DNA from: Okamejei kenojei
Lineage: Eukaryota
Reading direction: 5' to 3'
NCBI GenBank assembly: GCA_035221665.1
Contig: CM069154.1
Span: 6,138,001-6,202,000 of the forward strand
Length of the DNA stretch: 64,000 bases
In this document: positions 1 to 18,134 of the stretch, one piece after another
Numbering within the stretch: the stretch's first letter is position 1
Layout: each line of letters opens with the position of its first letter
Made by a program: the position numbers and the translations under genes
The notes under the pieces: model-generated
Told to the model about the DNA's origin: nothing
Databases searched by the model: none
What the model saw: the letters and a program-made list of their open reading frames with translations, nothing else

Positions 1-1643
1 AAAAAGGGATAAAAAAAATACCATAAAACAAAAGGAAAAACTAAAATTCAAGGTAAAAATTGTTGTTATAAGGAAAGATCTCCAAATGAGATCCATCGCT
101 ATATTTAACTCTATTCATTAAATAAACATTAGTTGTTAATTATTAGTAGTAGTGAACAATCTTAATTGGTAAAAATAATACTAATAATACCGCGTTGTGA
201 TTTTAATATTTGTGTTATTTATTTATATTAGTTATGTGATGAAACTAATTATTAATATCCAGATAACACTTTCCGATCCAGTTTTTTCTCTCAATTCCAT
301 TCGACATTGTCCATTCCGTCCAGTCCAATATTATCTTGTAAGATCTTACAGGATGTTGAGAGTCCGTGTAAAATCTCTAAAAGTAGTGAGAGTCAGTATA
401 TTCACTTGTAGATATTTTTCAGGTCTTGAACTGCTGTGCGAATTCCAGTGCTGCTGTTGGGGTGTTAAAGAAATGTTCCGCATCGTTAAAAGTAACTCTT
501 AAAGTAGCTGGGTAATTCAAACCATATCTCAGGTTTTGCACACCCCTCATGAGACTTTTAGCTTCATTAAATGCTTTCCGTTTCCTGGCAACCTCTGGTG
601 GGTAATCTCGGTAGATACTGATCCTTTGTCCTTCAAATATCAGGTTTCTGTTTCTCGAAGCTTTTCGCATAATCTCATCCAGAACAAAGTCATATTGTAG
701 CTTTATAATCATTTGTCTTGGAGGGGCGTTTGGTCTGGTCTGACGTCTGCTGACTCTATGAGCACGAGCTAATAAAGGCGTTTCTTCCAGAGATAGAATA
801 TCTTGCAGTAGTTTTGCAGCAAATTCGAGGATCTTCGTTTTTCTCTCGTCCTTCAGGAATCCCTCAGATTTTGTCTTCTCTGATGTCCTTCTAGCTCAAT
901 ACATTTCTCTGTTGTTTTAGTCAGCAAGTTCGTTAGACGTTCATTTTCTGTAAGCAGCTTTGCTGTAGTCAAAGCACTTGTATCAGCTATTTCTTCAAGG
1001 TTCTTTATACCAGCCGTCTGTTGTTCCAGTACTTCCTCCATAGGATTCATCCTATTTTGAAAGTCTTTTTTAACCTTTTCAAGTTTTTTGTCCATCTTCT
1101 TTGCCATTTCATTAAACATTTCAGTGAATTCATTCTTCAAATCTTCCGATAATTTCTTGATCTTGTTTTCAATATTTAACTTTGTTTCCTGTTGGAATTC
1201 TTTCAATTGATTATTCATCTGGTTCATCTGAGTGTTCATCTGGCTGTTCATCTGGTTCATCTGGTTGTTCATCTGGTTTATTTCTTCCTTTAAACCAGCA
1301 ATCTGTTGAGAAATAAAAGTTTTCAATTCCTCACCTTCCGTTTTTTTCCCTGTTCTTTTGGATACATCTTCCAGGGAGGAGGTCCTACTCGAGTCCGAGG
1401 CTTCAGTTTGGCCTTCTGGCTGTCTCTGCCGGGTTGATCGACCTTTCCCCTTGTCGGTAGGGCTCCATGCTGTTGACATAATTAGTCGCGCGCCTGATGA
1501 CGTCACTCACAACACTCGGTGCAGAAACGGCAGGCAGCAAGCAGCAGACAGCGGGTAGGTCCCTTAATCCCCCGTTTTTTCCAGTTTTTTTTCGTGGAGC
1601 TGGCTGGCGTTATCCTCTAGCCCTCCATAGCGCCACCGGAAGT
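1..1643 (-). mobile_element. LINE-1 (L1 clade) 5' UTR + ORF1 + start of inter-ORF spacer, running off the left edge
   Basis: Reverse complement starts ACTTCCGGTGGCGCTATGGAG, the same as the 5' end of the full-length L1 at ~9813. ORFs 853..1506 and 419..712 give a frameshifted L1 ORF1p (coiled coil, RRQNLR, ISIYRDYPPEV, YGLNYPATLRVT). Confidence 0.92.
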
Positions 1644-5391: not shown

Positions 5392-5490
5392 GTACAATGT
5401 TCTCAATTGATCCGTGTTGCGTCTGTATGAGAGAGACCTGCTTCAGATTGTCTCGTTTAGTTTAGAAATACAGCATAGTTAATAACATCA

Positions 5491-5778
5491 ATGACGGAAG
5501 TCATTAGATGGATAGCCATGTTAATATGGCTAACACAAACTACATCTATTCCAGATGTAGTTCTTTCCACCTTTACACACAACACTTTAATCTATCTTTT
5601 ATTTATCTTTCATATCTATTGTATTTCTCGGTTTGAATGGAGTAATATATTGTACCAATGGAGATATATTCGTGAGGGACAAAAAAGAGATTTAAAATTC
5701 ATCTATTCAAGGTTCAGGTGTAAGGTTGGGGGTCTATCGCGCTGATCCTTAGACTCTATTAGATCTCTACAAATTTAA
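5491..5778 (+). CDS. Putative L1 inter-ORF hydrophobic protein, outer copy (premature stop at 5743-5745 after a G-run expansion)
   Basis: 84-aa ORF homologous to 11666..11959. The frame reaches TAA at 5776-5778, one base before the ORF2 ATG (5780). Confidence 0.45.
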
Positions 5779-7795
5779 AATGCAAGACTTAAAAAGAAAT
5801 ACGGGGAATGAGGGATTAACGTTTTGCAGTTTGGAATGTTAAAGGTATTAACGAACCGATAAAGAGAGGAAAAGTATTGGCACATTTAAAAGGCAATTTA
5901 AAGCTGATGGTAATTTATATTCAAAAAAACCCACTTAAAAAAAGGTGGCGGAAAACAGGTTGAAAGCTAAATGGATAGATAAAATATATCATTCTTCTTT
6001 TACACATAAATCAAGAGGCGTAGCAATATTATTTCGTAAAGGCACTTTATTTAAACATACAATCAACCATAGCTGATAAAGATGGCAGATACATTATTGT
6101 GATAGGAGAATTAAATACAGAAAAAAATGATTTTTGTGTAATATATATGGACCAAATTTTGATAGTCCATTGTTTTTTTAAGAAGTATTTAACAATATCC
6201 CGGAATTAACACAATATAATTTGATAATTGGAGGAGATTTTAACTGTACATTGGATCCCAATTTAGAACAGATCTACAAAACAAAGAAAAATTAAATCAC
6301 ATTCTAGTGATTTATTAAATGCATACATGCAAACGACCAATATTAAAGATGTTTGGAGAACAGAAAACCCTACGGGACGAGAATATTCTTTACTCCCCAG
6401 TACAATAAAACTTATTCAAGAATAGATTATTTTTGGTGGATGCAAAACTTATTTCACTTACTTATGAATCTAAATATGATAATATTATAATCATCAGATC
6501 ATGGCGCCATTAACATTTAAAATTTAAAATCAATGGCAAAATAGAAAACTCAGGACAGTGGAAACTTAACCCACAAATTTTAAAAAATAAAGCCACCCAG
6601 GAATATATCATAACTCAAGTTAAGATTTTTTTTGAAATAAATGATCAACCAGAGATATCCCGTTCTTTATTATGGGAAACATTTAAAGCATATCCTCCGG
6701 GGAATCAAGATTTCTTCACAAGCATTCTATAACAAAAAGATTCGGAAAGAACAACAAGATTTAGAAAAGGAGAATTAAACAATTAAGATATACAGAATGC
6801 AACAAAAACCAGTTATAATATTACATAATAAAATTGTAACATTGAAATATAAATTAAACAAAATATATACAGATCAAGTGATAAAATTTTATCAACATAC
6901 TAAACAATTACAGTTTTGAGAATTTGGGGACAAACCCCAAAATTTATTGGCTCGACAATTAAGGAAAATTGAAGCGGAAAAAATCATACATAGGATTAAA
7001 TCACAAAACGGTGAATTATTAATACAACCTAAAGATACAAATGAAAGATTTATGCAATATTATAAAAATTTATACACTGCTAAAGCAACAGTAAATAAAA
7101 TAGAAATAGATGCATTCTTAAAAAAATGTAACCTGAAAGGATTGGATTTTACAAAACAGAGAATTATTAAATGCTGATATTTCAATAAATGAAATTGAAG
7201 AATCTATTAGATCATTAAAAAACGGGAAAACACCGGGACCCGATGGTATAGGTTCGAATTTTATAAAATATTTCATGATTATATGGTTCCATAATCTGAA
7301 ATCATTATATGAACAGATATACATACAACAGAAATTACCAGATACGTTGAATGAATCTATTATAACAACTTATACCTAAAACTAAATAAAGATTTGGATA
7401 ACCAGGATCATATAGAGCAATAGCTCTATTAAATACAGATCAAAAGATATTAACAAAAATATTAAGCAAAAAGACTGAGTTCAGTCGTTAATACGAACTA
7501 ACCATCCCGATCAAACAGATTTATACCAAAAAGATACTCTTCATACAACCTAAGACGGTTGTTCGATATTATATATTCGAAAAAGAGTGTGATAAAATAG
7601 ATTTAGTAGTCATTTCGCTTGATGCAGAAAAAGCTTTGACCAAGTAGAATGGCCTTATTATTTCGGTGATGGAAGCTTTCAAACTGGGGGAGGAGTTTAT
7701 TACTTGGATTAAATTACTATATGCAAATCCAATAGCTAGAATAACAACAAATCGAATGTTATCAACTAAAATTAATTTATCTCGAGGTGTAAACA

Positions 7796-8965
7796 TAGAA
7801 ACATAGAAACATAGAAATTTAGGTTGGCAGGAGTAGGCCATTCAGCCCATTCGAGCCTGCACCGCCATTCAATATGATCATGGCTGATCATCCAACTCAG
7901 TTCCCGTACCTGCCTTCTCCCATACTCCTGATCCCCTTAGCCACAAGGGCCACATCCAACTCACCTCTTAAATATAGTCCAATGAACTGGCCTCAACTAC
8001 CCTCTGTGGCAGAGAGTTCCAGAGACTCACCACTCTCTGTGTGAAAAAAGTCTTTCTCATCTCGGTCTTAAAGGATTTTCCCCCTTATCCTTAAGCTGTG
8101 ACCCCTTGTCCTGGACTTCCCCAACATCGGGAACAATCTTCCTGCATCTAGCCTGTCCAACCCCCTTAAGAATTTTGTAAGTTTCTATAAGATCCCCTCT
8201 CAATCTCCTAAATTCCAGAGAGTATAAACCGAGTCTATCCAGTCTTTCTTCATAAGAACAGTCCTGACATCCCAGGAATCAGTCTGTGAACCTTCTCTGC
8301 ACTCCCTCTATGGCAATAATGCCTTCCTCAGATTGGAGACCAAAACAGTTACGCAATACTCCAGGTGTTGTCTCACCAAGACCCTGTACAACTGAAGTAG
8401 AACCTCCCTGCTCCTGTACTCAAATCCTTTGGGGGGGGGCTATGAAAGCTAACATACCATTCGCTTTTTTCTCACTGCCTGCTGCACCTGCATGCCTACT
8501 TTCAATGACTGGTGTACCATGACACCCAGGACTCGCTGCATCTGCCCCTTTTCCTAATCGGCCACCATTTAAATAATAGTCTGCTTTCCTGTTTTTGGGG
8601 GGGGGGGGGGGGGGCCACCAAAGTGGATAACCTCACATTTATCCACATTATACTGCATCTGCCAAACATTTGCCCACTCACCCAGCCTATCCAAGTCACC
8701 TTGCAGTCATCTAGCATCCTCCTCACAGCGAACACTGCCCCCAGCTTAGTGTCATCCGCAAACTTGGAGATATTGCCTTCAATTCCCTCATCCAGATCAT
8801 TAATATATATTGTAAACAGCTGGGGTCCCAGCACTGAGCCCTGCTACCCCACTAGTTACTGCCTGCCATTGTGAAAAGGACCCGTTTACCTCCTACTCTA
8901 TGCTTCCTGTTTGCCAGCCAGTTCTCTATCCCACATCAATACTGAACCCCTAATACCGTATGCTT
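7796..8965 (-). mobile_element. CR1 LINE 3' ~1.2 kb nested in outer L1 ORF2
   Basis: (AAACATAG)n tail and an RT remnant ([30 protein letters not shown]). TAAACA is duplicated at 7790-7795 and 8966-8971, and removing the insert rejoins the L1 RT sequence. Confidence 0.9.
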
Positions 8966-9812
8966 TAAACAAGGTTGTCCTCTATCACCTTTATTGTTTG
9001 CATTAGTAATAGAACCCTTGCCCAGAGGGTGAGATTACACCCGGAAATACATGGATATGATACTACAGATAACTAAGAATAAAATCTCCTTATATGCGGA
9101 TGATGTATTACTTTATATCACTGAGCCAGAAAAACAAGTATCCGAAATTATGTTAAAACTAATAACGGAATTTGGATCACTCTCAGGATACAGTATCAAT
9201 TGGAATAAAAGTGAACTTATGCCAATAAACGGTGAATAATTTACATATATTGCAACAATTCCCTTTTAAAGATAACAAATGAAAAATATTAAATATCTTG
9301 GGGATTTTTTTGTTACAAAAACATTTGACTCTTTATTTAAATTTAATTTCCCTCCATTACTGAATAAATTAAATAAGAATTTTTATACTGGAAAAAGCTT
9401 ACCTATTTCAATGATAGGTAAAAATTAATGCAATAAAAATTATCTTTCTCCCACAATTATTATATTTATTTCAATTAATTCCGATATATCTTCCTAAATT
9501 TTTTTTTAAAAAAAGTAGACTCTATAATTACTAACTTTAACTGGGATTATAAGAGCCATAGAATAAATAAAAAACACTTATGTAAATCTAAAATAAACGA
9601 GGATTAGCATTACCAAATCTTATGTTTTATTACTGGGCAGTTAATATTAAAAATATGAATTTTTGGCTAGAAGAAATAGATAATAAACCAAATTGGTTAA
9701 ATATGGAAAAAGAAGATTGTTCTCCATTTGAAATTAGCTCTATAATATTTGCTAACACTAATGTAGCTAAGAAAAGTTTATAGTGAAAATCCGATAATAG
9801 AAAACGGAATTC

Positions 9813-12800
9813 GACTTCCGGTGGCGCTATGGAGCCTTAAAGCATAGCGCCAGCCATCTCCGCAAAAATTTTGAAAAAACGGGGATTTAAACGGATTTAA
9901 AAGAACTTACCCCGATCGCCTGCTTTTACTGTCTGCCGCTTCAACATTGACGGTACCGGCTGACGTCATCAGCCCTGCGACAAATCATGACGGCACGGAG
10001 CCCTACCGATAAAACGAAGGGTCGAAAAACCCGGGCGAGAGCGGGAGAAGGCCTGGGAGAAGCCTCGGACTCGAGTAGGGCCAGTTCCCTGGAAGACGTC
10101 TCCAGGAAAGCAGACACAGGAGGTGAGGACTTGAGAACTTTTATTTCTCACCAGATGGCTGATTTTAAAACGTGAGTTCAAGGCAGAAATGAAAGATATA
10201 AAGAAAGAAATGAAAGAAATAAAGGGAGATATAAAGGAAGAAAAAGAAATCTCTCAAATTAATAATCAGATGGACTTGATGAAAAATCAATGGAGTGAAT
10301 TTCAAAAAAGATACAAAGACACAAATTGATAATAAGTTCAAGAAAGAATCAGAAATATTGAAGAATGAAATCATTGATATGATTAATAATATGGAACGCA
10401 AGATGGAGGCTAAAACTTGAAAAATGTTAAAAAAGACTTTAAAAATAAGATTGACCCTATTGCAAATGTGGTCGAACAACAAGTTGATGGCATTAAAAAC
10501 CTTGAAAAGATAGCGGAGGCTAGTACTGTGTCTACAGCAAAGCTGATAACAGAGCAAGAACGTCTACTGGAGTTGTTATCCAAAGTAACAGATAAATGCA
10601 CGCAGCTAGAAGGCTATCAAAGAAGGCAGAACTTGAGGATTGCAGGGATTCCTGAAGGTCTAGAGAAACACGAAGACACTCGAGAATTCACTGCTAAATT
10701 ACTGCAAGCTGTTTTATCTTTGGATGATATGCCTGTTTTAGCTCGTGCACATCGAGTCGGCAGAAGACAGACCAGTGCAAATGCCCCCCCAAGACAAATC
10801 ATTGTAAAGTTACAATATGATTTCACTCTCGAGGATATTATGCGGAGAGCCTCGAGAACAAAGAATCTGATGTTTCAAGGACAAAGAATCAGTATCTATC
10901 GAGACTATCCCCCAGAGGTTGCCAGAAAACGAAAAGCGTTTAACGAAGCCAAAAACCTTATGAGGGGTGTAGAAAACTTGAGATACGGTCTGAATTACCC
11001 AGCCATCCTAAGAATTACTTATAACAGCGTGGAACACTTTTTCAAGACTCCAACAGAAGCAATGGAATTTGCAAAGCAGTTTGACACTTGAAAACCATCT
11101 ACAAGCAAATATACTGTCTTTTACTATTTTTAAAGACCTAGTACGGTCTCTTAACATTCTATGAGACTTTATACGACAATATGGAATTAGAAGAAATCAG
11201 AAGGAACGGACAATGTCGTATGGAACGAAATGTTTTCCCGGATTGGAAGAAGCTCACCGAACATTGACAATTACTCATAATATATAACTAACACAAACAA
11301 AATAACACACATACTAAAATTATAACGCGGTTTTATTATTACTATGACTGTTATTAACCAAGACTGTTCACTATTGCTAATTAATACTACTAATAATTAA
11401 TATTTTATGTTTTGTTACATTTGGAGATACCCTCCCCTTAATGTATTTTTTCCTCTTTTAATAATGATTTCTATTTTTTGTATTTAAAAAAAAACTCTTT
11501 ATCTGTGGCTTTATAATTAGATTTTTTTAAACTAATTTTAGATATATATACTTTTATGATGATTAATATCACTCCTTTCATTTCTTTAATATTATATTCC
11601 CGTTAAAATATTATCATGGAATAATAATTCCTTAAAATTAGGAGCTGGCTAAATTAATAACATCAATGCCGGAAGCCTTTAGATTAATAGCCAATATAGT
11701 TTGGCTTTCACAAACTACAAATATTTTATTTGTAGTTTTTCTACTCTTATTGCACTCTACTAAGCTTTTTACTTACTTTTCATTATTCTTTTATGTTTAC
11801 TATATCTTTCAGTTTGAATGGAGCTATACACTGGAACAATGGAGATATATTCGTGAAGTATATAAAAGAGACCTAAAATTCGTCTATTCGGTGTTCGGGT
11901 GTAAGGTTAGGTCTACTGCGCGGACCCTTGGACCCTATTCTAGATTCCCACAAACCTAAAATGCAGGATTTAAAAAGAAATATGGGGAAACGAGGGATTA
12001 ACCTTTTGCAGTTGGAATGTTAAAGGTATCAATGAACCAATAAAAAGAGGAAAAATATTGACACACTTAAAGGCAATGAAAGCTGATGTAATTTATATTC
12101 AAGAAACTCACCTAAAGAAAGACGCTGAAAATAGGCTTGAAAGCTAAATGGATAGATAAAATATATCACTCTTCCTTTACGCATAAATCAAGAGGCGTAG
12201 CAATATTATTTCGTAAAGGTACTTTATTTAAGCATATATCTACTATATCTGATAAAGATGGCAGATACATTATTGTAATAGGAGAAATAAACAGGGAAAA
12301 AATGATTTTTGTTAACATCTATGGACCAAATTTTGATAGTCCTTTATTCTTTAAGAAAGTACTTAATAATATTCCAGAATTAACACATTACAATTTGATA
12401 ATTGGAGGAGATTTTAATTGTACATTAGACCCTTATTTAGATAGATCTTCAAAACAAAGGAAAACTAAATCGCATACTAGTGATTTATTAAACGCATACA
12501 TCCAAACGACTAACATTAAAGATGTTTGGAGAACAGAAAATCCTACTGGTCGAGAATATTCCTTCTACTCGCCAGTACATAAAACTTATTCAAGAATAGA
12601 TTACTTCCTAGTAGATGCAAAGCTTATTTCACTTACTTACGAATCCAAATATCATAATATTATAATTTCAGATCATGCACCATTAACATTTAAAATTAAA
12701 ATAAATGGTAAAAACAGAAAATCTAGGACAATGGAAACTTAATCCACAAATTTTAAAAAATAAAACCACTCAGGAATACATTATAACTCAGATTAAGATG

Positions 12801-15800
12801 TTTTTTGAAATAAATGATCAACCAGAAATATCTCGCTCTTTATTATGGGAAACATTTAAAGCATATCTTCGAGGAATTATGATTTCTTCACAAGCATTCC
12901 ATAATAAGAAGATTCGGAAAGGAACAACACGACTTAGAAAGGGAGATTAAACAATTAGATATACAGAATGCAACAAAATCAATATAATAATACATAATAA
13001 AATTGTAGCATTGAAGTATAAATTAAATAAAATATATACTGATCAAGTTTTAAAATACTACCAACATACTAAACAATTGTTGTTTGAATTTGGAGACAAA
13101 CCACAAAAACTATTGGCTCGACAATTAAGGAAAATTGAAGCTGAAAAAATTATACATAGGATTAAATCACAAAACGGTGAATTATTAATACAACCCAAGG
13201 ATATTAATGAAAGATTTATGCAATATTATAAAAAATTTGTATACTGGTAACACAACAGTAAATAAAACAGAAATAGATGCCTTTTTAAATGTATGTAACT
13301 TAAAAGAATTAGATTTACAAAATAGAGAACTATTAAATGCCGATATTTCAATAAAAGAAATCCAAGAATCTATTAAATCTTTAAAAAATGGTAAAACTCC
13401 AGGACCAGATGGTATAGGCTCGGAATTTTATAAAAATTTTTCATGACCAAATGGTCCCATATTTAAAATCATTATATGAACAGATATATACACAAGAGAA
13501 ATTACCAGATACACTGAACGAATCTATTATAACACTTATACCCAAAATAAATAAAGATTTGGATGATCCAGGATCATATAGAGCAATTGCTTTATTAAAT
13601 ACGGATCAAAAAAATTTTAACAAAGATTCTTGCACAAAGATTAAGCAAAATTGTTAACGAATTAATTCATCCTGATCAAACAGGATTTATACCTAAAAGA
13701 TATTCTTCATATAATCTAAGACGGTTATTTAATATCATATATTCGAAAAGAAGTGATAAAAAAGACTTAGTAGTCATCTCGTTGGATGCAGAAAAAGCTT
13801 TTGACCAGGTGGAATGGCCTTATTCTATTTTCGGTGATGGAAGCCTTTAAGCTTGGTGATAAGTTTACTACTTGGATTAAATTATTATATGCAAACCCAA
13901 CAGCTAGAATAATAACAAACCATATGTTATCATCTAAGTTTAGTTTATCTCGAGGTTGTAGACAAGGCTGTCCTTTATCACCATTACTGTTTGCGTTAGC
14001 AATCGAACCTCTTGCTCAAAGGGTAAGATTGCACCCAGAAATATATGGATATGATACTAAAGATACTAAGAATAAAATCTCGTTATATGCGGACGATATA
14101 ATTACTTTATATTACTAAACCGGAAATAAGTATCCGTAATTTGTTAAAACTAATAACGGAATTTGGTTTAATTTTCAGGATACAGTATCAATTGGAATAA
14201 AAGTGAACTTATGCCAATAACCATGAATAATTTACAGATATTACAACAATTTCCTTTTAAGATAACAAATGAAAATATTAAATATCTTGGTATTTTTGTT
14301 ACAAAAAGATTTGACTCTTTATTTAAGTCTAATTTCCCGTTATTATTGAATAAATTAAATAAAAATATCTTATACTGGAAAAAGCTTACCTATCTCAATG
14401 TTAGGAAAATAAACGCAATAAAAATGATTTCCTCCCACAATAATTATATTTATTTCAATCAATCCCGATATATCTCTCTAAAAAATTTTTTAAAAAAGTA
14501 GATTCAATAGTCACTAACTTTATCTGGGATTATAAGAATCATAGAATAAATAAAAAACATTTATGTAAAGCTAAAATAAACGGGGGTTTAGCTTTACCAA
14601 ATTTTATGTTTTATTATTGGGCAGTTAATATTAAAAATATGAATTTTTGGTTAGGAGAAATAGATAATAAAACCAAATTGGTTAAAAATGGAAAGAGAAG
14701 ACTGTTTTCCATTTGAAATTAGCTCTATAATATTTGCTAATATTAATGTACCTAAGAAAAATTTATAGTGAAAAATTTGATAATAGAAAGTGGAATACGT
14801 ATTTGGAAACAAATAAAGAAAACACTAAAACTAAAATTTATACCGCTAGGTCTTACAATTGCCAACAACTTTACGTTTAAACCGTCAATGATGGATAAAG
14901 CTTTTATACAATGGAAAAATAAAGGAATTTTAAATATAGGGGATCTTTATAAGGAAAATTCTTTTCTTTCATTTCAAGAATTACAACAAACCTACGGGCT
15001 TCATAATAATGAATATTTCAGATATTTACAAATCAGAAACTATATCTCTGCAAATACACAAGAACTCAGAAATAGAAAGAGTGAAATTTTAGATGAATGC
15101 TTGAATAAACATCCAAATACAGAAAAAAGATATCATACATTTACAATATTTTTGTTGGAAAGTGATATTCCATCATCGGAAATACATAGACAGCGCTGGG
15201 AAAATGAATTAAGTCAAATAATAAGTCCAGAAATATGGGAAGCTTAAACATATACATTATTGTTCTTTAAATGCTAAACATGCTCTTATACAGTTTAAAA
15301 TTTTACATAGATTACATTATTCTAAATCTAAATTACATAATATATTTCCAAAACTATCACCTATATGTGATAAATGTCAAATCTTAGAAGCAACTTTGTC
15401 ACATTCATTTACTAATTGTACGAAGATTCTAGAATATTGGAATGAAATATTTTAAGATAATCTCGAAAGTTATTAATATTACTATGATTCATGACCCAAA
15501 GTTAATCATACTTGGAATACCGGAAACGGAACAAATAATTACAAGGAATCAAAGAACTTTTATCGACTATTCTTTAATAATTGGGAAAAAAATTAATATT
15601 AAAATTTTGGAAAGGCCCTGTATCCCCAACAATTAAAATGTGGAATACAGAAATGACGGAGACACTTCACTTGGAGAGATTGAGACTTGTCCTTATGGAC
15701 AGGTTAGATCTCTTCAAGGAGATATGGTCTCCCTATATTAAATATCTACAGGGTCACAATGGTTCGGCGCAGGGACTTGACTGAGGCCTGAATATCTGAA

Positions 15801-16465
15801 TGGATGAAGAAATACATATAACAAATCATGAATGTATCTCCAAGAATGGATTATTTAGTAATACTTCAATCTCCATCAAACTTTTCACATTTTCTTTTCT
15901 ATTTTCTATTTTTCTCTCTATCTTCCTATCTTTAATTAAGGAAAAAAATATAGAAACATATTATATAAATTTTTAATACGTACACACTTATTTCTGTTCG
16001 TATGAAAAGATTATAGATGTCTTTAAACTTATAATTATATAAAACTATGTATTTTCAATTATACAATAATTATGAAATATAAAGTTAACAATAATACAAA
16101 CATTATTAATATTTTTGATAACATTATGAATATCATAAAACTTTGTTTAAGATTGGGTATTACATAGTTATATTAGCGGGGATTTCTATTTGGTAATCAG
16201 AAGAATATCTATGATTTGAGAAATCTAAGTGTATTGCTTATTTTAGAAATATACTACATATACTCCCAATTATATAAAATAAATAACCACGAAATGTATA
16301 ATGGATTAATATTACAATTAACATAAATAGTATTAATCGATAATCAATATGATATAATTTTGCATATTACACAACTTTCATGTCGTATAAGAGTGTACTC
16401 GATATATATTGTTTCTACAATAAAAAAAATTAAAAAATAAAAAAATAAAAAAAATTTAAAAAAAA
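9813..16465 (+). mobile_element. Full-length L1 (~6.65 kb) nested in outer L1 ORF2: 5' UTR, ORF1 9987-11091, spacer, ORF2 11961-15784, 3' UTR, poly(A)
   Basis: TSD AGAAAACGGAATTC(G) at 9799-9812 and 16466-16479. ORF1p, APE (GGDFN, SRIDY, SDH), RT (RQGCPLSPLLF, LYADD) and CCHC segments occur in order, with several 1-bp frameshifts. Confidence 0.95.
11666..11959 (+). CDS. Putative L1 third ORF (97 aa, hydrophobic, possibly membrane-associated) immediately upstream of ORF2
   Basis: ATG in catcaATG context, hydrophobic N-terminal half, basic C-terminal half. The stop is followed by A-ATG of ORF2. A homolog is present at 5491. Confidence 0.5.
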   Translation: MPEAFRLIANIVWLSQTTNILFVVFLLLLHSTKLFTYFSLFFYVYYIFQFEWSYTLEQWRYIREVYKRDLKFVYSVFGCKVRSTARTLGPYSRFPQT

Positions 16466-18134
16466 AGAAAACGGAATTCGCATCTGGAAACAAATAAAGA
16501 AAGCATTAAAACTAAAATCTATACCATTAGGTCTTACAATTGCCAATAATTTTGTGTTTTAAACCTTCAATGTTGGATAAGGCTTTTTTACAATGGAAAA
16601 ATAAAGGAATTTCTAAGATGGGTGATCTTTATAAGGAAAATACTTTTCTTTCATTTCAAGAGTTACAACAAACTTATGGGCTACACAATAAAGAATATTT
16701 TAGATATTTACAAATTAGAAATTACGTTTCTGCAAATATACAAGAATTTAGAAATAGAAAGACAGAAATTTTAGATGAATGCTTGAATTAACACCCAAAT
16801 ACGGAAAAAATGATATCATATATATATAATATTTTATTGGAAAATGATACCCCATCAACAGAAACATATAGAGATCTTGGAAAAAGGAATTAGGTCAAAT
16901 AATAAGACCAGAAATATGGGATGAAAGTCTACAACATATACATCATTGCTCGTTAAATGCTAAACATTCCCTTATACAGTTTAAAATACTACATAGATTA
17001 CATTATTCTAAATCTAAATTACATTATATTTTCCCAAAGATATCTCCTACATGTGATAAATGTCAAATTTCAGAAGCAAATTTGTCACATTCATTTACTA
17101 AACTGTATAAAAATTGTAGAAATACTGGAACGAAATATTTAAGATAATTTCGAATGTTGTCAATATAAGTATGACTCCTGACCCAAAGTTAATTATACTT
17201 GGAATATTTGAAACTGACCAACTAATAACAATGAATCAAAGAACTTTTTATTGACTACTGTCTAATAATTGGGAAAAAATTAATATTAAAATTTTGGAAA
17301 GGCCCTGCATTCCCAACAATCAAAATGTGGAATACAGAAATGTCGGAGACACTCCATTTGGAGAGATTGAGGCTTGTCCTTATGGATAGGTTAGACCTCT
17401 TCAGAAGGATTTGGTCTCCGTATATTAAATATTTACAGGGTCATAATGGTTCGGCGCGAGGACTTGACTGAGGCCTGGATATTTGAATGGATGAAGAAAT
17501 ATATATAATAAATCTTTAAGGGCGAATTAATGACGAATATTCTATTCTCCATCAAACCTTTCTTATTCTTTATTCTTTTTTCTATTTTCTCATATCTATA
17601 TAAAAAATTAGAAAATAGTATAGAAACAAATTATCTTAACCTCTTAATATCAGTACGAATATAAATATTTTTAACTTCATGAGAATATTATTAGTATCTT
17701 ATATTTTTAATTATATAAAATTGTGTATTTTTCAATTATATAATAATTTTAAATTTTAAATCAGTGATAACACAGATATTGTTAACTTTACGAAAATATA
17801 ATGAATATCATAAAAGTTTTACTAGTATTTCATATTATTAATTACATAAGATTTGGCATTATACTTAAAAATTAGAGACAAAACAAATATTATTAACAGT
17901 ATGAGTATATTGCTAATACTATAAATGTATTATTAGTATCATGTATTCTTAGTTATATAAAATATATAACCTTGAAATTTATAATTAAGAACAATACAAA
18001 TAATATTAATAGTATGAATTTATCATTAATATTATGTATTTTCACTATAGTAAAATAATGTACTCTGTTATTATTTTGTTTCTATAATAAATAAAATTAA
18101 AAAATAAAAAAATAAAAAAAAAGAAATACAGCAT

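What the first reader, a model, noticed from the sequence alone, without database searches (positions are those of the whole stretch)
11666..11963. Conserved third ORF between ORF1 and ORF2 of this L1 lineage, encoding a small hydrophobic protein
Seen: the ~870-bp inter-ORF spacer contains a 97-aa ATG ORF whose stop sits one base before the ORF2 ATG (TAA-A-ATG). A diverged second copy (5491-5778) keeps the same start context, the same terminal TAA-A-ATG, a net 6-nt length difference and the motif FEWS..L.QWRYIRE..KRDLKF.YS.F.CKV with several synonymous changes. Its early stop follows a +2 G-run change compensated by a -2 change. The outer L1 is 5'-truncated just 14 bp upstream of this ATG. Known: canonical L1 has ORF1 and ORF2, and ORF2 translation depends on termination/reinitiation from an upstream ORF. 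Inference: an accessory membrane-associated L1 protein or a dedicated translational-coupling ORF, possibly on a subgenomic RNA. I know of no description of it but cannot search.
Basis: partly seen in the sequence, partly recalled or inferred. Interest (0 to 1): 0.78.

Follow-up and report, generated by a model that had tools for sequence, protein, structure and literature searches.

The report
Kept-open spacer ORF abutting L1 ORF2
A roughly 95-codon reading frame in the long spacer of a fish-type L1 retrotransposon stays open and ends right at the start of the next gene, but its peptide evolves freely, so it looks like a device for delivering ribosomes and not like a new protein.

Summary
A 97-codon ATG ORF (11666-11959) lies in the 869-nt ORF1-ORF2 spacer of a full-length L1. 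Its TAA sits one base before the ORF2 ATG. A second, nested L1 copy keeps the same start and the same TAA-A-ATG.

- **More than chance:** shuffles of the spacer give an ORF this long with P=0.005. After 76 substitutions between the copies, no in-frame stop has P about 0.02.
- **Third lineage:** one diverged relative exists only as protein (P0005, Logan contigs). It is also open there.
- **Peptide not conserved:** dN/dS is 0.73 and differences by codon position are 27/25/24. ORF2 in the same pair gives 0.14 and 60/51/145.
- **Hydrophobicity is compositional:** it matches T-richness, and the "membrane" segment is not kept.
- **No known fold, family or RNA element**.

Best reading: a translated coupling ORF that ends at the ORF2 AUG (termination-reinitiation). 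This is a variant of an idea already proposed for human and megabat L1. Long AT-rich spacers are normal in fish L1. The accessory-protein reading is not supported. The subgenomic-RNA reading rests on a single truncated copy. Only two DNA copies were available.

The parts
9814..16465 (+). Inner, full-length but decayed L1, flanked by a 15-nt target-site duplication (9799-9813 and 16466-16480) and ending in an A-rich tail
10417..11091 (+). C-terminal 224 codons of ORF1 of the inner L1, with its stop
   Evidence: 59% identical to a Rhinoraja longicauda protein; weak L1 ORF1 RBD-like Pfam match, E 0.012, below the cutoff.
11092..11960 (+). ORF1-ORF2 intergenic spacer: 869 nt, 29% G+C, T-rich. It has 12 ATGs and nine short ORFs (2-28 codons) ahead of ORF3.
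11666..11959 (+). ORF3 of the inner copy: 97 codons plus TAA
11957..11963 (+). Stop-start junction TAA-A-ATG. ORF2 lies in the +1 frame relative to ORF3.
11961..12742 (+). Start of ORF2 (endonuclease). It is out of register in this copy: other copies differ by one base in length at 11988 and at 12136/12137.
   Evidence: Exo_endo_phos E 9.9e-9; table 4.
5477..7795 (+). 5' part of the outer L1, truncated 14 nt before its ORF3 ATG. It continues at 8966-9813 and, after the inner L1, runs to about 18121. Its target-site duplication is at 5464-5476 and 18122-18134.
5491..5778 (+). ORF3 of the outer copy. Its own frame stops at 5743-5745 (84 codons) between a +2 and a -2 length change. The aligned frame is open to the TAA at 5776-5778, followed by A and then the ORF2 ATG at 5780.
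1..1643 (-). Third, more diverged L1 copy: ORF1 plus the first part of the spacer. It aligns up to the equivalent of 11394. Its ORF3 region would lie left of the window.

Best explanation
ORF3 is a reading frame that the active L1 lineage keeps open, while its peptide sequence is nearly free to change. The most likely working is this. Ribosomes translate ORF3 and terminate at a stop codon that sits one base before the ORF2 AUG, or a few codons past it in a third lineage. The small ribosomal subunit is then in place to reinitiate on ORF2 despite the 869-nt AUG-rich spacer.

Shown here: the ORF exists; it is longer than chance; it has stayed stop-free with only in-frame net length change across a near-neutral divergence; its end is tied to the ORF2 start; and there is no amino-acid-level constraint.

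Inferred: that it is translated, that termination there promotes ORF2 initiation, and how ribosomes reach its AUG. The options for that last step are a relay over the short upstream ORFs, an internal entry site, or a shorter transcript.
For: - ORF length: P=0.0048 in spacer shuffles and 0.0004 in local shuffles; 0.001-0.003 per frame with local composition kept.
- Divergence: the two copies differ at 76 of 286 aligned sites in ORF3. ORF2 dS is 0.52 in the same pair, so most of the divergence arose in active lineages.
- Stop avoidance: the aligned ORF3 frame has 0 stops in 94 codons. Simulation of 76 substitutions expects 3.7 stops and gives P(none)=0.017. The other two frames carry 5 and 4 copy-specific stops.
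- Length changes: -6, and a +2/-2 pair that restores the frame to the shared TAA.
- Junction: TAA-A-ATG is identical in both copies.
- Third lineage: P0005/P0006, 36% identical, is open over the whole homologous stretch. It has the same length apart from the same 2-codon gap as the outer copy.
- Peptide unconstrained: omega 0.73; differences by codon position 27/25/24 against 60/51/145 for ORF2 (chi-square P=0.0006).
- Precedent in print, from passages read: translation of human L1 ORF2 was proposed to depend on termination of an ORF just upstream, and removing all AUGs from the megabat spacer lowered retrotransposition about 3.3-fold (PMC4072516). SART1 couples ORF1 and ORF2 through UAAUG (PMC3894237).
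Against: - Only two DNA copies and one protein-only relative could be examined.
- P0005 was found in a library of called ORFs, so lineages with a closed frame would be missed.
- The empirical stop-turnover control allows P anywhere from about 0.01 to 0.08 (my Poisson estimate).
- The outer copy's own frame is broken.
- P0005 has no Met at the shared start and no stop at the shared TAA.
- Reinitiation efficiency is said to fall with the length of the upstream ORF (PMC3894237 passage), and 97 codons is long.
- The ORF3 AUG has a weak context (T at -3) and follows 12 upstream ATGs.
- No translation data exist. All laid runs were contigs, and 'RNA' for run X6 is a guess.
Confidence: 0.5

Rival explanations
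1. Chance ORF. A T-rich spacer happened to contain a long open frame in the common ancestor of these lineages, and it has simply not been hit by a stop yet. It has no function.
For: - There is no amino-acid constraint, and both the differences and the base composition are flat across codon positions.
- The N-terminal half is 67% identical, which is about the neutral level.
- It is also the least covered bin of the spacer in all four runs.
- The sample is n=2 DNA copies.
- The Atlas recognition score of 1739 is below the 2300 that 91 in 100 proteins of known families reach.
Against: - P=0.005 for the ORF length.
- P about 0.02 for staying stop-free over 76 substitutions.
- The start, the stop and the junction are all kept.
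- Only in-frame net length change, whereas the upstream spacer shows gaps of 10, 1, 1 and 3 nt against the third copy.
- The frame is open in a third lineage at 36% identity.
Confidence: 0.25
2. [quoted passage not shown] The open frame is then a side effect.
For: - The last 160 nt of ORF3 are 77-80% identical against 67% for the first half, with differences spread 10/13/10 over codon positions. That points to constraint on nucleotides and not on codons.
- PMC5381506 passages report program-predicted entry sites next to ORF2 in long intergenic regions.
- The first 300 nt of the spacer are also conserved, at 65-73%, against a lineage whose ORF1 is 73-80% identical.
Against: - Folding of 11790-11990 is no more stable than shuffles: z = +0.74, with 156 of 200 shuffles folding at least as well.
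- Only 2 of 41 predicted pairs show a two-sided change, with two sequences.
- There is no Rfam match at E<=1.
- A nucleotide element does not explain stop avoidance in the fast-evolving first half.
Confidence: 0.12
3. ORF3 encodes a fast-evolving accessory protein, which is the reader's small hydrophobic or membrane protein.
For: - The open frame is kept.
- 23 columns are invariant in three lineages, including W-L..TT, FEW, RY.R and KF.Y..F.
- AlphaFold draws two long helices.
Against: - Omega is 0.73 and not different from 1 (Fisher P=0.25). The out-of-frame controls give 0.78 and 0.41.
- GRAVY is 0.26 against 0.48 +/- 0.31 for random ORFs of the same composition. The best 19-residue window scores 2.1 against 1.70 +/- 0.45 (P=0.19).
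- The hydrophobic segment is not kept in the outer copy, whose best window scores 1.43.
- There are 0 Pfam families.
- Apart from the P0005 cluster there is no relative in the two protein libraries.
- The fold is not confident: mean pLDDT 68.5, pTM 0.30.
Confidence: 0.08
4. ORF3 marks the 5' end of a shorter ORF3-ORF2 transcript, and the outer copy is a retrotransposed copy of that RNA.
For: The outer L1 begins 14 nt before the ATG, with a clean target-site duplication. This can coexist with the main explanation.
Against: - It is one copy only, and 5' truncation is common in L1.
- Summed contig depth does not step up at about 11650. The only step is at 11980, where other subfamilies start to align (table 2).
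- Table 6 lists no begin/end cluster, although contigs cannot show RNA ends.
Confidence: 0.05

Closest known systems
Termination-reinitiation model of L1 ORF2 translation, and the small ORFs in the long megabat L1 intergenic region (Alisch 2006 and Yang 2014; passages of PMC4072516 read, and of PMC5381506)
   Same: An upstream ORF terminates close to the ORF2 AUG, and the peptide of that ORF is irrelevant. The long spacer carries AUG-initiated ORFs. In megabat, removing those AUGs lowered retrotransposition about 3.3-fold.
   Different: Here it is a single long ORF of about 95 codons whose stop is fixed at the ORF2 AUG, and it shows statistical signs of being kept open across diverged lineages. 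It occurs in a cartilaginous-fish-type L1. No functional test exists.
SART1 (silkworm LINE) UAAUG stop-start coupling of ORF1 and ORF2 (Kojima 2005, seen only as cited and described in PMC3894237)
   Same: It is a non-LTR retrotransposon in which ORF2 initiation is coupled to termination of the ORF just upstream, with stop and start within a few bases.
   Different: In SART1 the upstream ORF is ORF1 itself and there is no spacer. Here an extra ORF would do the job at the end of an 869-nt spacer, and stop and start are separated by one base and do not overlap.
[quoted passage not shown]
   Same: The length (869 nt, within 257-1,032 bp), low G+C (29%), T-richness and short 5' UTR architecture all match.
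   Different: The passages I read examine repeats, RNA structure and predicted entry sites but do not mention an ORF in the spacer. Their supplement S4, which covers the intergenic regions, could not be opened.
Primate L1 ORF0 and the mammalian antisense ORFs (Denli 2015, as described in PMC5203782)
   Same: It is an additional short ORF in an L1.
   Different: ORF0 is antisense and lies upstream of ORF1. It is described as a 71-aa peptide whose overexpression raises mobility. ORF3 is sense, lies between ORF1 and ORF2, and shows no peptide constraint.
Viral coupled termination-reinitiation (for example hypovirus CHV1 UAAUG, abstract of PMC2699510; calicivirus and influenza B cases with an 18S-complementary upstream motif are recalled, not from a call)
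   Same: A long upstream ORF ends at or next to the downstream AUG.
   Different: No 18S-complementary motif was tested here, because no 18S sequence was at hand.

Membership tests
L1-clade non-LTR retrotransposon with long intergenic region | ORF2 begins with an apurinic-type endonuclease domain | tested here: met
   Exo_endo_phos E 9.9e-9, 35.7 bits against a cutoff of 24.5, on 12137-12739
L1-clade non-LTR retrotransposon with long intergenic region | ORF1 of the L1 type (coiled coil, RRM, C-terminal domain) | tested here: inconclusive
   The Pfam L1 RBD-like domain matches at E 0.012, 16.4 bits, below the 22.4 cutoff. The piece is 59% identical to an unnamed skate protein.
L1-clade non-LTR retrotransposon with long intergenic region | Target-site duplication and A-rich 3' tail | tested here: met
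   15-nt and 13-nt duplications flank the inner and outer copies, and both have A-rich tails
L1-clade non-LTR retrotransposon with long intergenic region | Reverse transcriptase domain in ORF2 | not tested
   No family scan was run on the downstream ORF2 pieces
L1-clade non-LTR retrotransposon with long intergenic region | Long, low-GC, T-rich spacer between ORF1 and ORF2 | tested here: met
   869 nt; A 33%, T 38%, G+C 29%. The range in PMC5381506 is 257-1,032 bp.
Translational-coupling (termination-reinitiation) upstream ORF | The stop of the upstream ORF lies within a few bases of the downstream AUG | tested here: met
   TAA-A-ATG in 2 of 2 window copies. In P0005 the frame runs 5 codons past that point, as inferred from the protein tail only.
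Translational-coupling (termination-reinitiation) upstream ORF | The frame is kept open while the peptide is free to vary | tested here: met
   P=0.0048. P=0.017. 0 copy-specific stops against 5 and 4 in the other frames. Omega 0.73 and 27/25/24. The sample is two DNA copies plus one protein.
Translational-coupling (termination-reinitiation) upstream ORF | The upstream ORF is translated | not testable with these tools
   Only contigs were laid. No ribosome profiling data were available.
Translational-coupling (termination-reinitiation) upstream ORF | Closing or moving the upstream ORF lowers downstream translation | not testable with these tools
   Needs reporter experiments
Translational-coupling (termination-reinitiation) upstream ORF | Upstream motif complementary to 18S rRNA, as in viral cases (recalled) | not tested
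Accessory protein-coding gene (small membrane protein) | Purifying selection on amino acids | tested here: not met
   Omega 0.73 (frame controls 0.78 and 0.41), Fisher P=0.25. ORF2 control 0.14.
Accessory protein-coding gene (small membrane protein) | Conserved transmembrane segment beyond what composition gives | tested here: not met
   The best 19-residue hydropathy window is 2.1 (inner), 1.43 (outer) and 2.27 (P0005, at a different place). Random ORFs of the same composition give 1.70 +/- 0.45.
Accessory protein-coding gene (small membrane protein) | Recognisable family or fold | tested here: not met
   0 Pfam families. No Atlas hit. pLDDT 68.5, pTM 0.30.
Internal ribosome entry site / structured RNA element | Stable or covarying RNA structure, or a match to a known family | tested here: not met
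   z = +0.74. 2 of 41 pairs with two-sided change, from two sequences. 0 Rfam matches. Power is low with two sequences.

The most novel reading that the evidence does not exclude
This L1 lineage of cartilaginous fishes is functionally tricistronic. A dedicated ORF of about 95 codons with a free peptide sequence is an obligatory part of the element, because ORF2 can only be translated by ribosomes that terminate ORF3 at the ORF2 AUG. A shorter ORF3-ORF2 RNA starting just upstream of ORF3 may add to this. That would give a natural, sequence-readable answer to how ORF2 is translated behind a long intergenic region.
Probability: 0.3. Interest if true: 0.65.

Novelty: new variant of a known kind. 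Interest (0 to 1): 0.45.

Why it matters
How L1 ORF2 is translated from a bicistronic RNA is unsettled. It is hardest to explain for the long, AUG-rich intergenic regions that are the rule outside placental mammals; the discussion of PMC5381506 calls reinitiation across such a region inefficient and risky. A long spacer ORF that is kept open and ends exactly at the ORF2 AUG would be a concrete, testable solution. It predicts which mutations should abolish ORF2 translation and which should not: start, stop position and frame should matter, and codon identity should not. It also warns annotators that a conserved open frame in a transposon need not be a protein. If the frame turns out to be a chance survivor, the finding is ordinary.

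Tried and rejected
More copies from elsewhere.
- Two short patterns gave 0 matches in metagenome contigs and genome contigs, and the second also gave 0 in viral contigs.
- tblastn of the window found no further L1 junction.
- Protein searches with ORF3 gave nothing, or only the P0005 cluster.
- P0004, a tandem-repeat protein of a snail (E 4.6e-7 over 6 stretches), I take for a chance match boosted by repetition.

Read laying. All four runs were contigs. Only 40 of 326 variant rows and 12 of 25 length-change rows were shown, so no proper codon-position test on the family was possible.
- My hand count on the 12 shown rows inside ORF3 gives positions 5/2/5 and no new stop. This is too few to weigh.
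- 0 of the 12 shown length-change rows lie in ORF3. Nine lie in the upstream spacer, but six of those come from one contig, so this is not significant.

Readings considered and rejected.
- Membrane protein.
- N-terminal extension of ORF2: the TAA and the +1 offset are shared by both copies.
- Programmed +1 frameshift fusion: the ORF2 frame is open 28 codons upstream of its ATG in the inner copy but only 9 in the outer, and no shared slippery site was seen.
- Structured RNA.
- Antisense ORF: none of 80 aa or more on the minus strand there.

Print search., and passages read, turned up no description of a sense ORF of this kind in an L1 spacer apart from the megabat small ORFs. Supplements were not opened and subscription journals are not covered. 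The earlier notes of this scan did not bear on the question.

All comparisons were copy against copy.
Full report
**What is there.** The window holds a full-length but decayed L1 on the + strand (9814-16465). It has a 15-nt target-site duplication and an A-rich tail. This inner copy is inserted into an older L1. The older, outer L1 starts at 5477 and runs, with interruptions, to about 18121. It is flanked by a 13-nt duplication at 5464-5476 and 18122-18134. A third, more diverged copy lies on the minus strand at the left edge (1643 down to about 128).

In the inner copy ORF1 ends at 11091 and ORF2 starts at 11961. The 869 nt between them are 29% G+C and T-rich. ORF2 carries the endonuclease domain. 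The best named relative of ORF1 is a protein of the skate Rhinoraja longicauda at 59% identity. A cartilaginous fish host is therefore likely, but that is an inference.

**The observation.**
- The ATG ORF has 97 codons at 11666-11959, with TAA at 11957-11959, one A, then the ORF2 ATG.
- The second copy (5491-5778) has the same 12 bases before the ATG and the same TAA-A-ATG.
- The length changes are -6, +2 and -2. A TGA arises in the shifted stretch, so the outer copy's own ORF is 84 codons.
- The outer element starts 14 nt before the ATG.

**Is it more than chance?** Yes, moderately to strongly.
- In 5000 dinucleotide shuffles of the spacer, the longest + strand ATG ORF averages 36 codons, and 0.48% reach 97. 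For the local 400 nt the figure is 0.04%.
- Shuffling within blocks of 12-60 nt keeps the pyrimidine-rich middle in place. This expects 5.3-6.0 stops in a frame and gives none in 0.1-0.3% of trials.
- The two other frames of the same stretch hold 5 and 8 stops.
- The nine ORFs that start upstream of ORF3 in the spacer have 2 to 28 codons.

**How the two copies diverged.** This is the key control. Over 22 ungapped blocks (1925 nt) of ORF2, the same two copies give dS 0.52, dN 0.075 and omega 0.14. Differences by codon position are 60/51/145. The two out-of-frame readings give omega 0.99 and 0.93. Most of the divergence between the copies therefore arose while their lineages were active and under selection, so the pair has the power to show coding constraint.

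ORF3 shows none.
- It is 73.4% identical, against 86.7% for ORF2.
- dS is 0.42, dN is 0.31 and omega is 0.73, against 0.78 and 0.41 in its own two other frames.
- Differences by codon position are 27/25/24. This distribution differs from that of ORF2 with P=0.0006.
- The first half is 67% identical with omega 0.97, that is, neutral.
- The last 160 nt are 77-80% identical, but there too the differences fall 10/13/10. What is conserved there is nucleotides, not codons.
- Base composition does not differ between codon positions (chi-square P=0.97). A 291-nt sample of ORF1 or ORF2 also gives only P=0.24 and 0.07, so this test is weak.

**Yet the frame stays open.** In the aligned frame neither copy has a stop in 94 comparable codons. 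The two other frames have 5 and 4 stops present in one copy only. Placing 76 substitutions at random, with the observed spectrum, creates 3.7 stops on average and none in 1.7% of trials, from either copy. From the turnover in the other frames, my own Poisson estimate is P between about 0.01 and 0.08.

The ATG and the TAA are both kept, with P=0.15 for six sites at this divergence. Net length change is in frame, and the +2/-2 pair returns the frame to the shared stop. In the upstream spacer, by contrast, the inner copy and the third copy differ by gaps of 10, 1, 1 and 3 nt within 310 nt.

**A third lineage.** A full HMMER pass over 1.84 billion representatives gave two hits at E<=0.001. One is a tandem-repeat protein of a snail, which I set aside. 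The other is P0005 (127 aa, E 1.1e-4), which has one cluster mate, P0006 (135 aa). They come from three Logan contigs in all, the longest 2222 nt.
- P0005 aligns over residues 3-96 of ORF3 at 36% identity and shares the 2-codon gap of the outer copy. Between the conserved blocks and the end it has the same length as the inner copy.
- Its frame is open further upstream, and it has Ala where the others have the start Met.
- It runs five codons past the shared TAA. The tail matches the translation of the ORF2 start in that frame, so there ORF3 probably overlaps the ORF2 AUG by about 14 nt. That is inferred from the protein alone.
- The profile search found no further member.

This hit comes from a library of called ORFs, so lineages with a closed frame would not be seen. 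It counts as support, not as an unbiased sample.

**The family in reads.** Contigs of four runs were laid at 80% likeness: 3384, 583, 56 and 20 contigs.
- The family is abundant in organism A and present, nearly identical in places, in organisms B and C. One contig of organism C has 0 differences and one gap over 185 nt across the junction.
- Summed depth rises about fourfold at 11980. There ORF2 of other subfamilies begins to align.
- The lowest spacer bin in organism A, empty in B and C, is 11724-11787, the middle of ORF3. This fits free evolution there.
- One 342-nt contig of run X6 covers 11616-11957 with 37 differences and no gap.
- None of the 12 shown length-change rows (of 25) falls in ORF3. 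The rows at 11988 and 12136/12137 show that the inner copy differs in length by one base from other copies at the ORF2 start, which is why its ATG and its endonuclease frame are out of register.
- No cluster of begins or ends was listed, but contigs cannot show RNA ends. The label 'RNA' for X6 is a guess.

**Is it a protein?** Nothing says so.
- There are 0 Pfam families. The Atlas gave no hit, and its recognition score was below that of most real families.
- AlphaFold gives two generic helices with pLDDT 68.5 and pTM 0.30.
- GRAVY is 0.26, lower than the 0.48 +/- 0.31 of random stop-free ORFs of the same base composition. The best 19-residue window (2.1) is within their range (P=0.19).
- The hydrophobic run of the inner copy reads with Pro, Asp, Ser and Thr in the other two lineages.

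**Is it an RNA element?** The 200 nt around the junction fold no better than shuffles (z +0.74). Two sequences give 2 of 41 pairs with two-sided change. Rfam gives nothing at E<=1. This is weak evidence against, given only two sequences.

**Mechanism.** The pattern is a frame kept open, a free peptide, a movable start, and an end tied to the next AUG. That is what is expected of an ORF that matters because it is translated, not for what it encodes. The simplest working is termination-reinitiation: ribosomes finishing ORF3 are released at UAA-A-AUG, and the 40S subunit starts ORF2.

Several points count against this. A 97-codon ORF is long for ordinary reinitiation (PMC3894237 passage). The ORF3 AUG has T at -3. 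It follows 12 ATGs and nine short ORFs, so how ribosomes reach it is open. The candidates are a relay of short ORFs, an entry site, or a shorter RNA. I put 0.5 on this reading, 0.25 on a chance survivor, 0.12 on a nucleotide-level element with an incidental frame, 0.08 on a fast-evolving protein and 0.05 on the subgenomic RNA as the main point.

**Comparison with what is known.**
[quoted passage not shown] Program-predicted entry sites next to ORF2 have been reported. The authors call reinitiation across such a region risky (PMC5381506, passages).
- For human L1 it was proposed that termination of an ORF just upstream of ORF2 is what matters. In a megabat L1 with a 445-bp spacer, mutating all spacer AUGs lowered retrotransposition about 3.3-fold (PMC4072516, passages).
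- SART1 couples its ORFs by UAAUG (PMC3894237).
- Additional L1 ORFs in print are the antisense ORF0 and antisense ORFs of some mammals (PMC5203782).
- My six searches found no description of a long sense ORF kept in the spacer and ending at the ORF2 AUG. Supplements and subscription journals were not seen.

I file this as a new variant of a known kind.

**Limits.** Collection scans were empty. No expression or translation data were available.

Noticed in passing
window 11092-11400 against minus-strand copy 128-418: The first 300 nt or so of the spacer are 65-73% identical between the inner L1 and the diverged minus-strand lineage. That is about as conserved as ORF1 in the same pair (73-80%). 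Further on, the alignment falls to about 50%. The start of the spacer may carry a conserved signal of its own.
   Followed up: partly
window 7796-8965: The outer L1 is interrupted by about 1.2 kb of other sequence. It holds a minus-strand ORF (8502-8834) with a reverse-transcriptase-like ...FADDTKL... stretch, probably a fragment of another non-LTR element.
   Followed up: no
window 17650-18060: The 3' untranslated region of the outer L1 looks like four or so degenerate tandem units of roughly 100 nt, AT-rich (seen by eye). Species-specific 3' UTR repeats in L1 are mentioned in PMC5381506.
   Followed up: no
window 11892-12077 (run X14, record 20): A contig from a different organism label (organism C) matches the ORF3-end/ORF2-start junction with 0 differences and one gap over 185 nt. 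Contigs of organism B are 97-99% identical over 200-300 nt. The family is shared by close relatives or is very young.
   Followed up: no
P0004: A 363-aa tandem-repeat 'hypothetical protein' of the snail Batillaria attramentaria matches residues 53-87 of ORF3 six times (E 4.6e-7). I take this for a chance match multiplied by repetition.
   Followed up: partly
window 11988 and 12136-12137: The inner copy differs from many other copies of the family by one base in length at these two places. This puts its ORF2 ATG, the first endonuclease codons and the rest of ORF2 in three different frames.
   Followed up: partly
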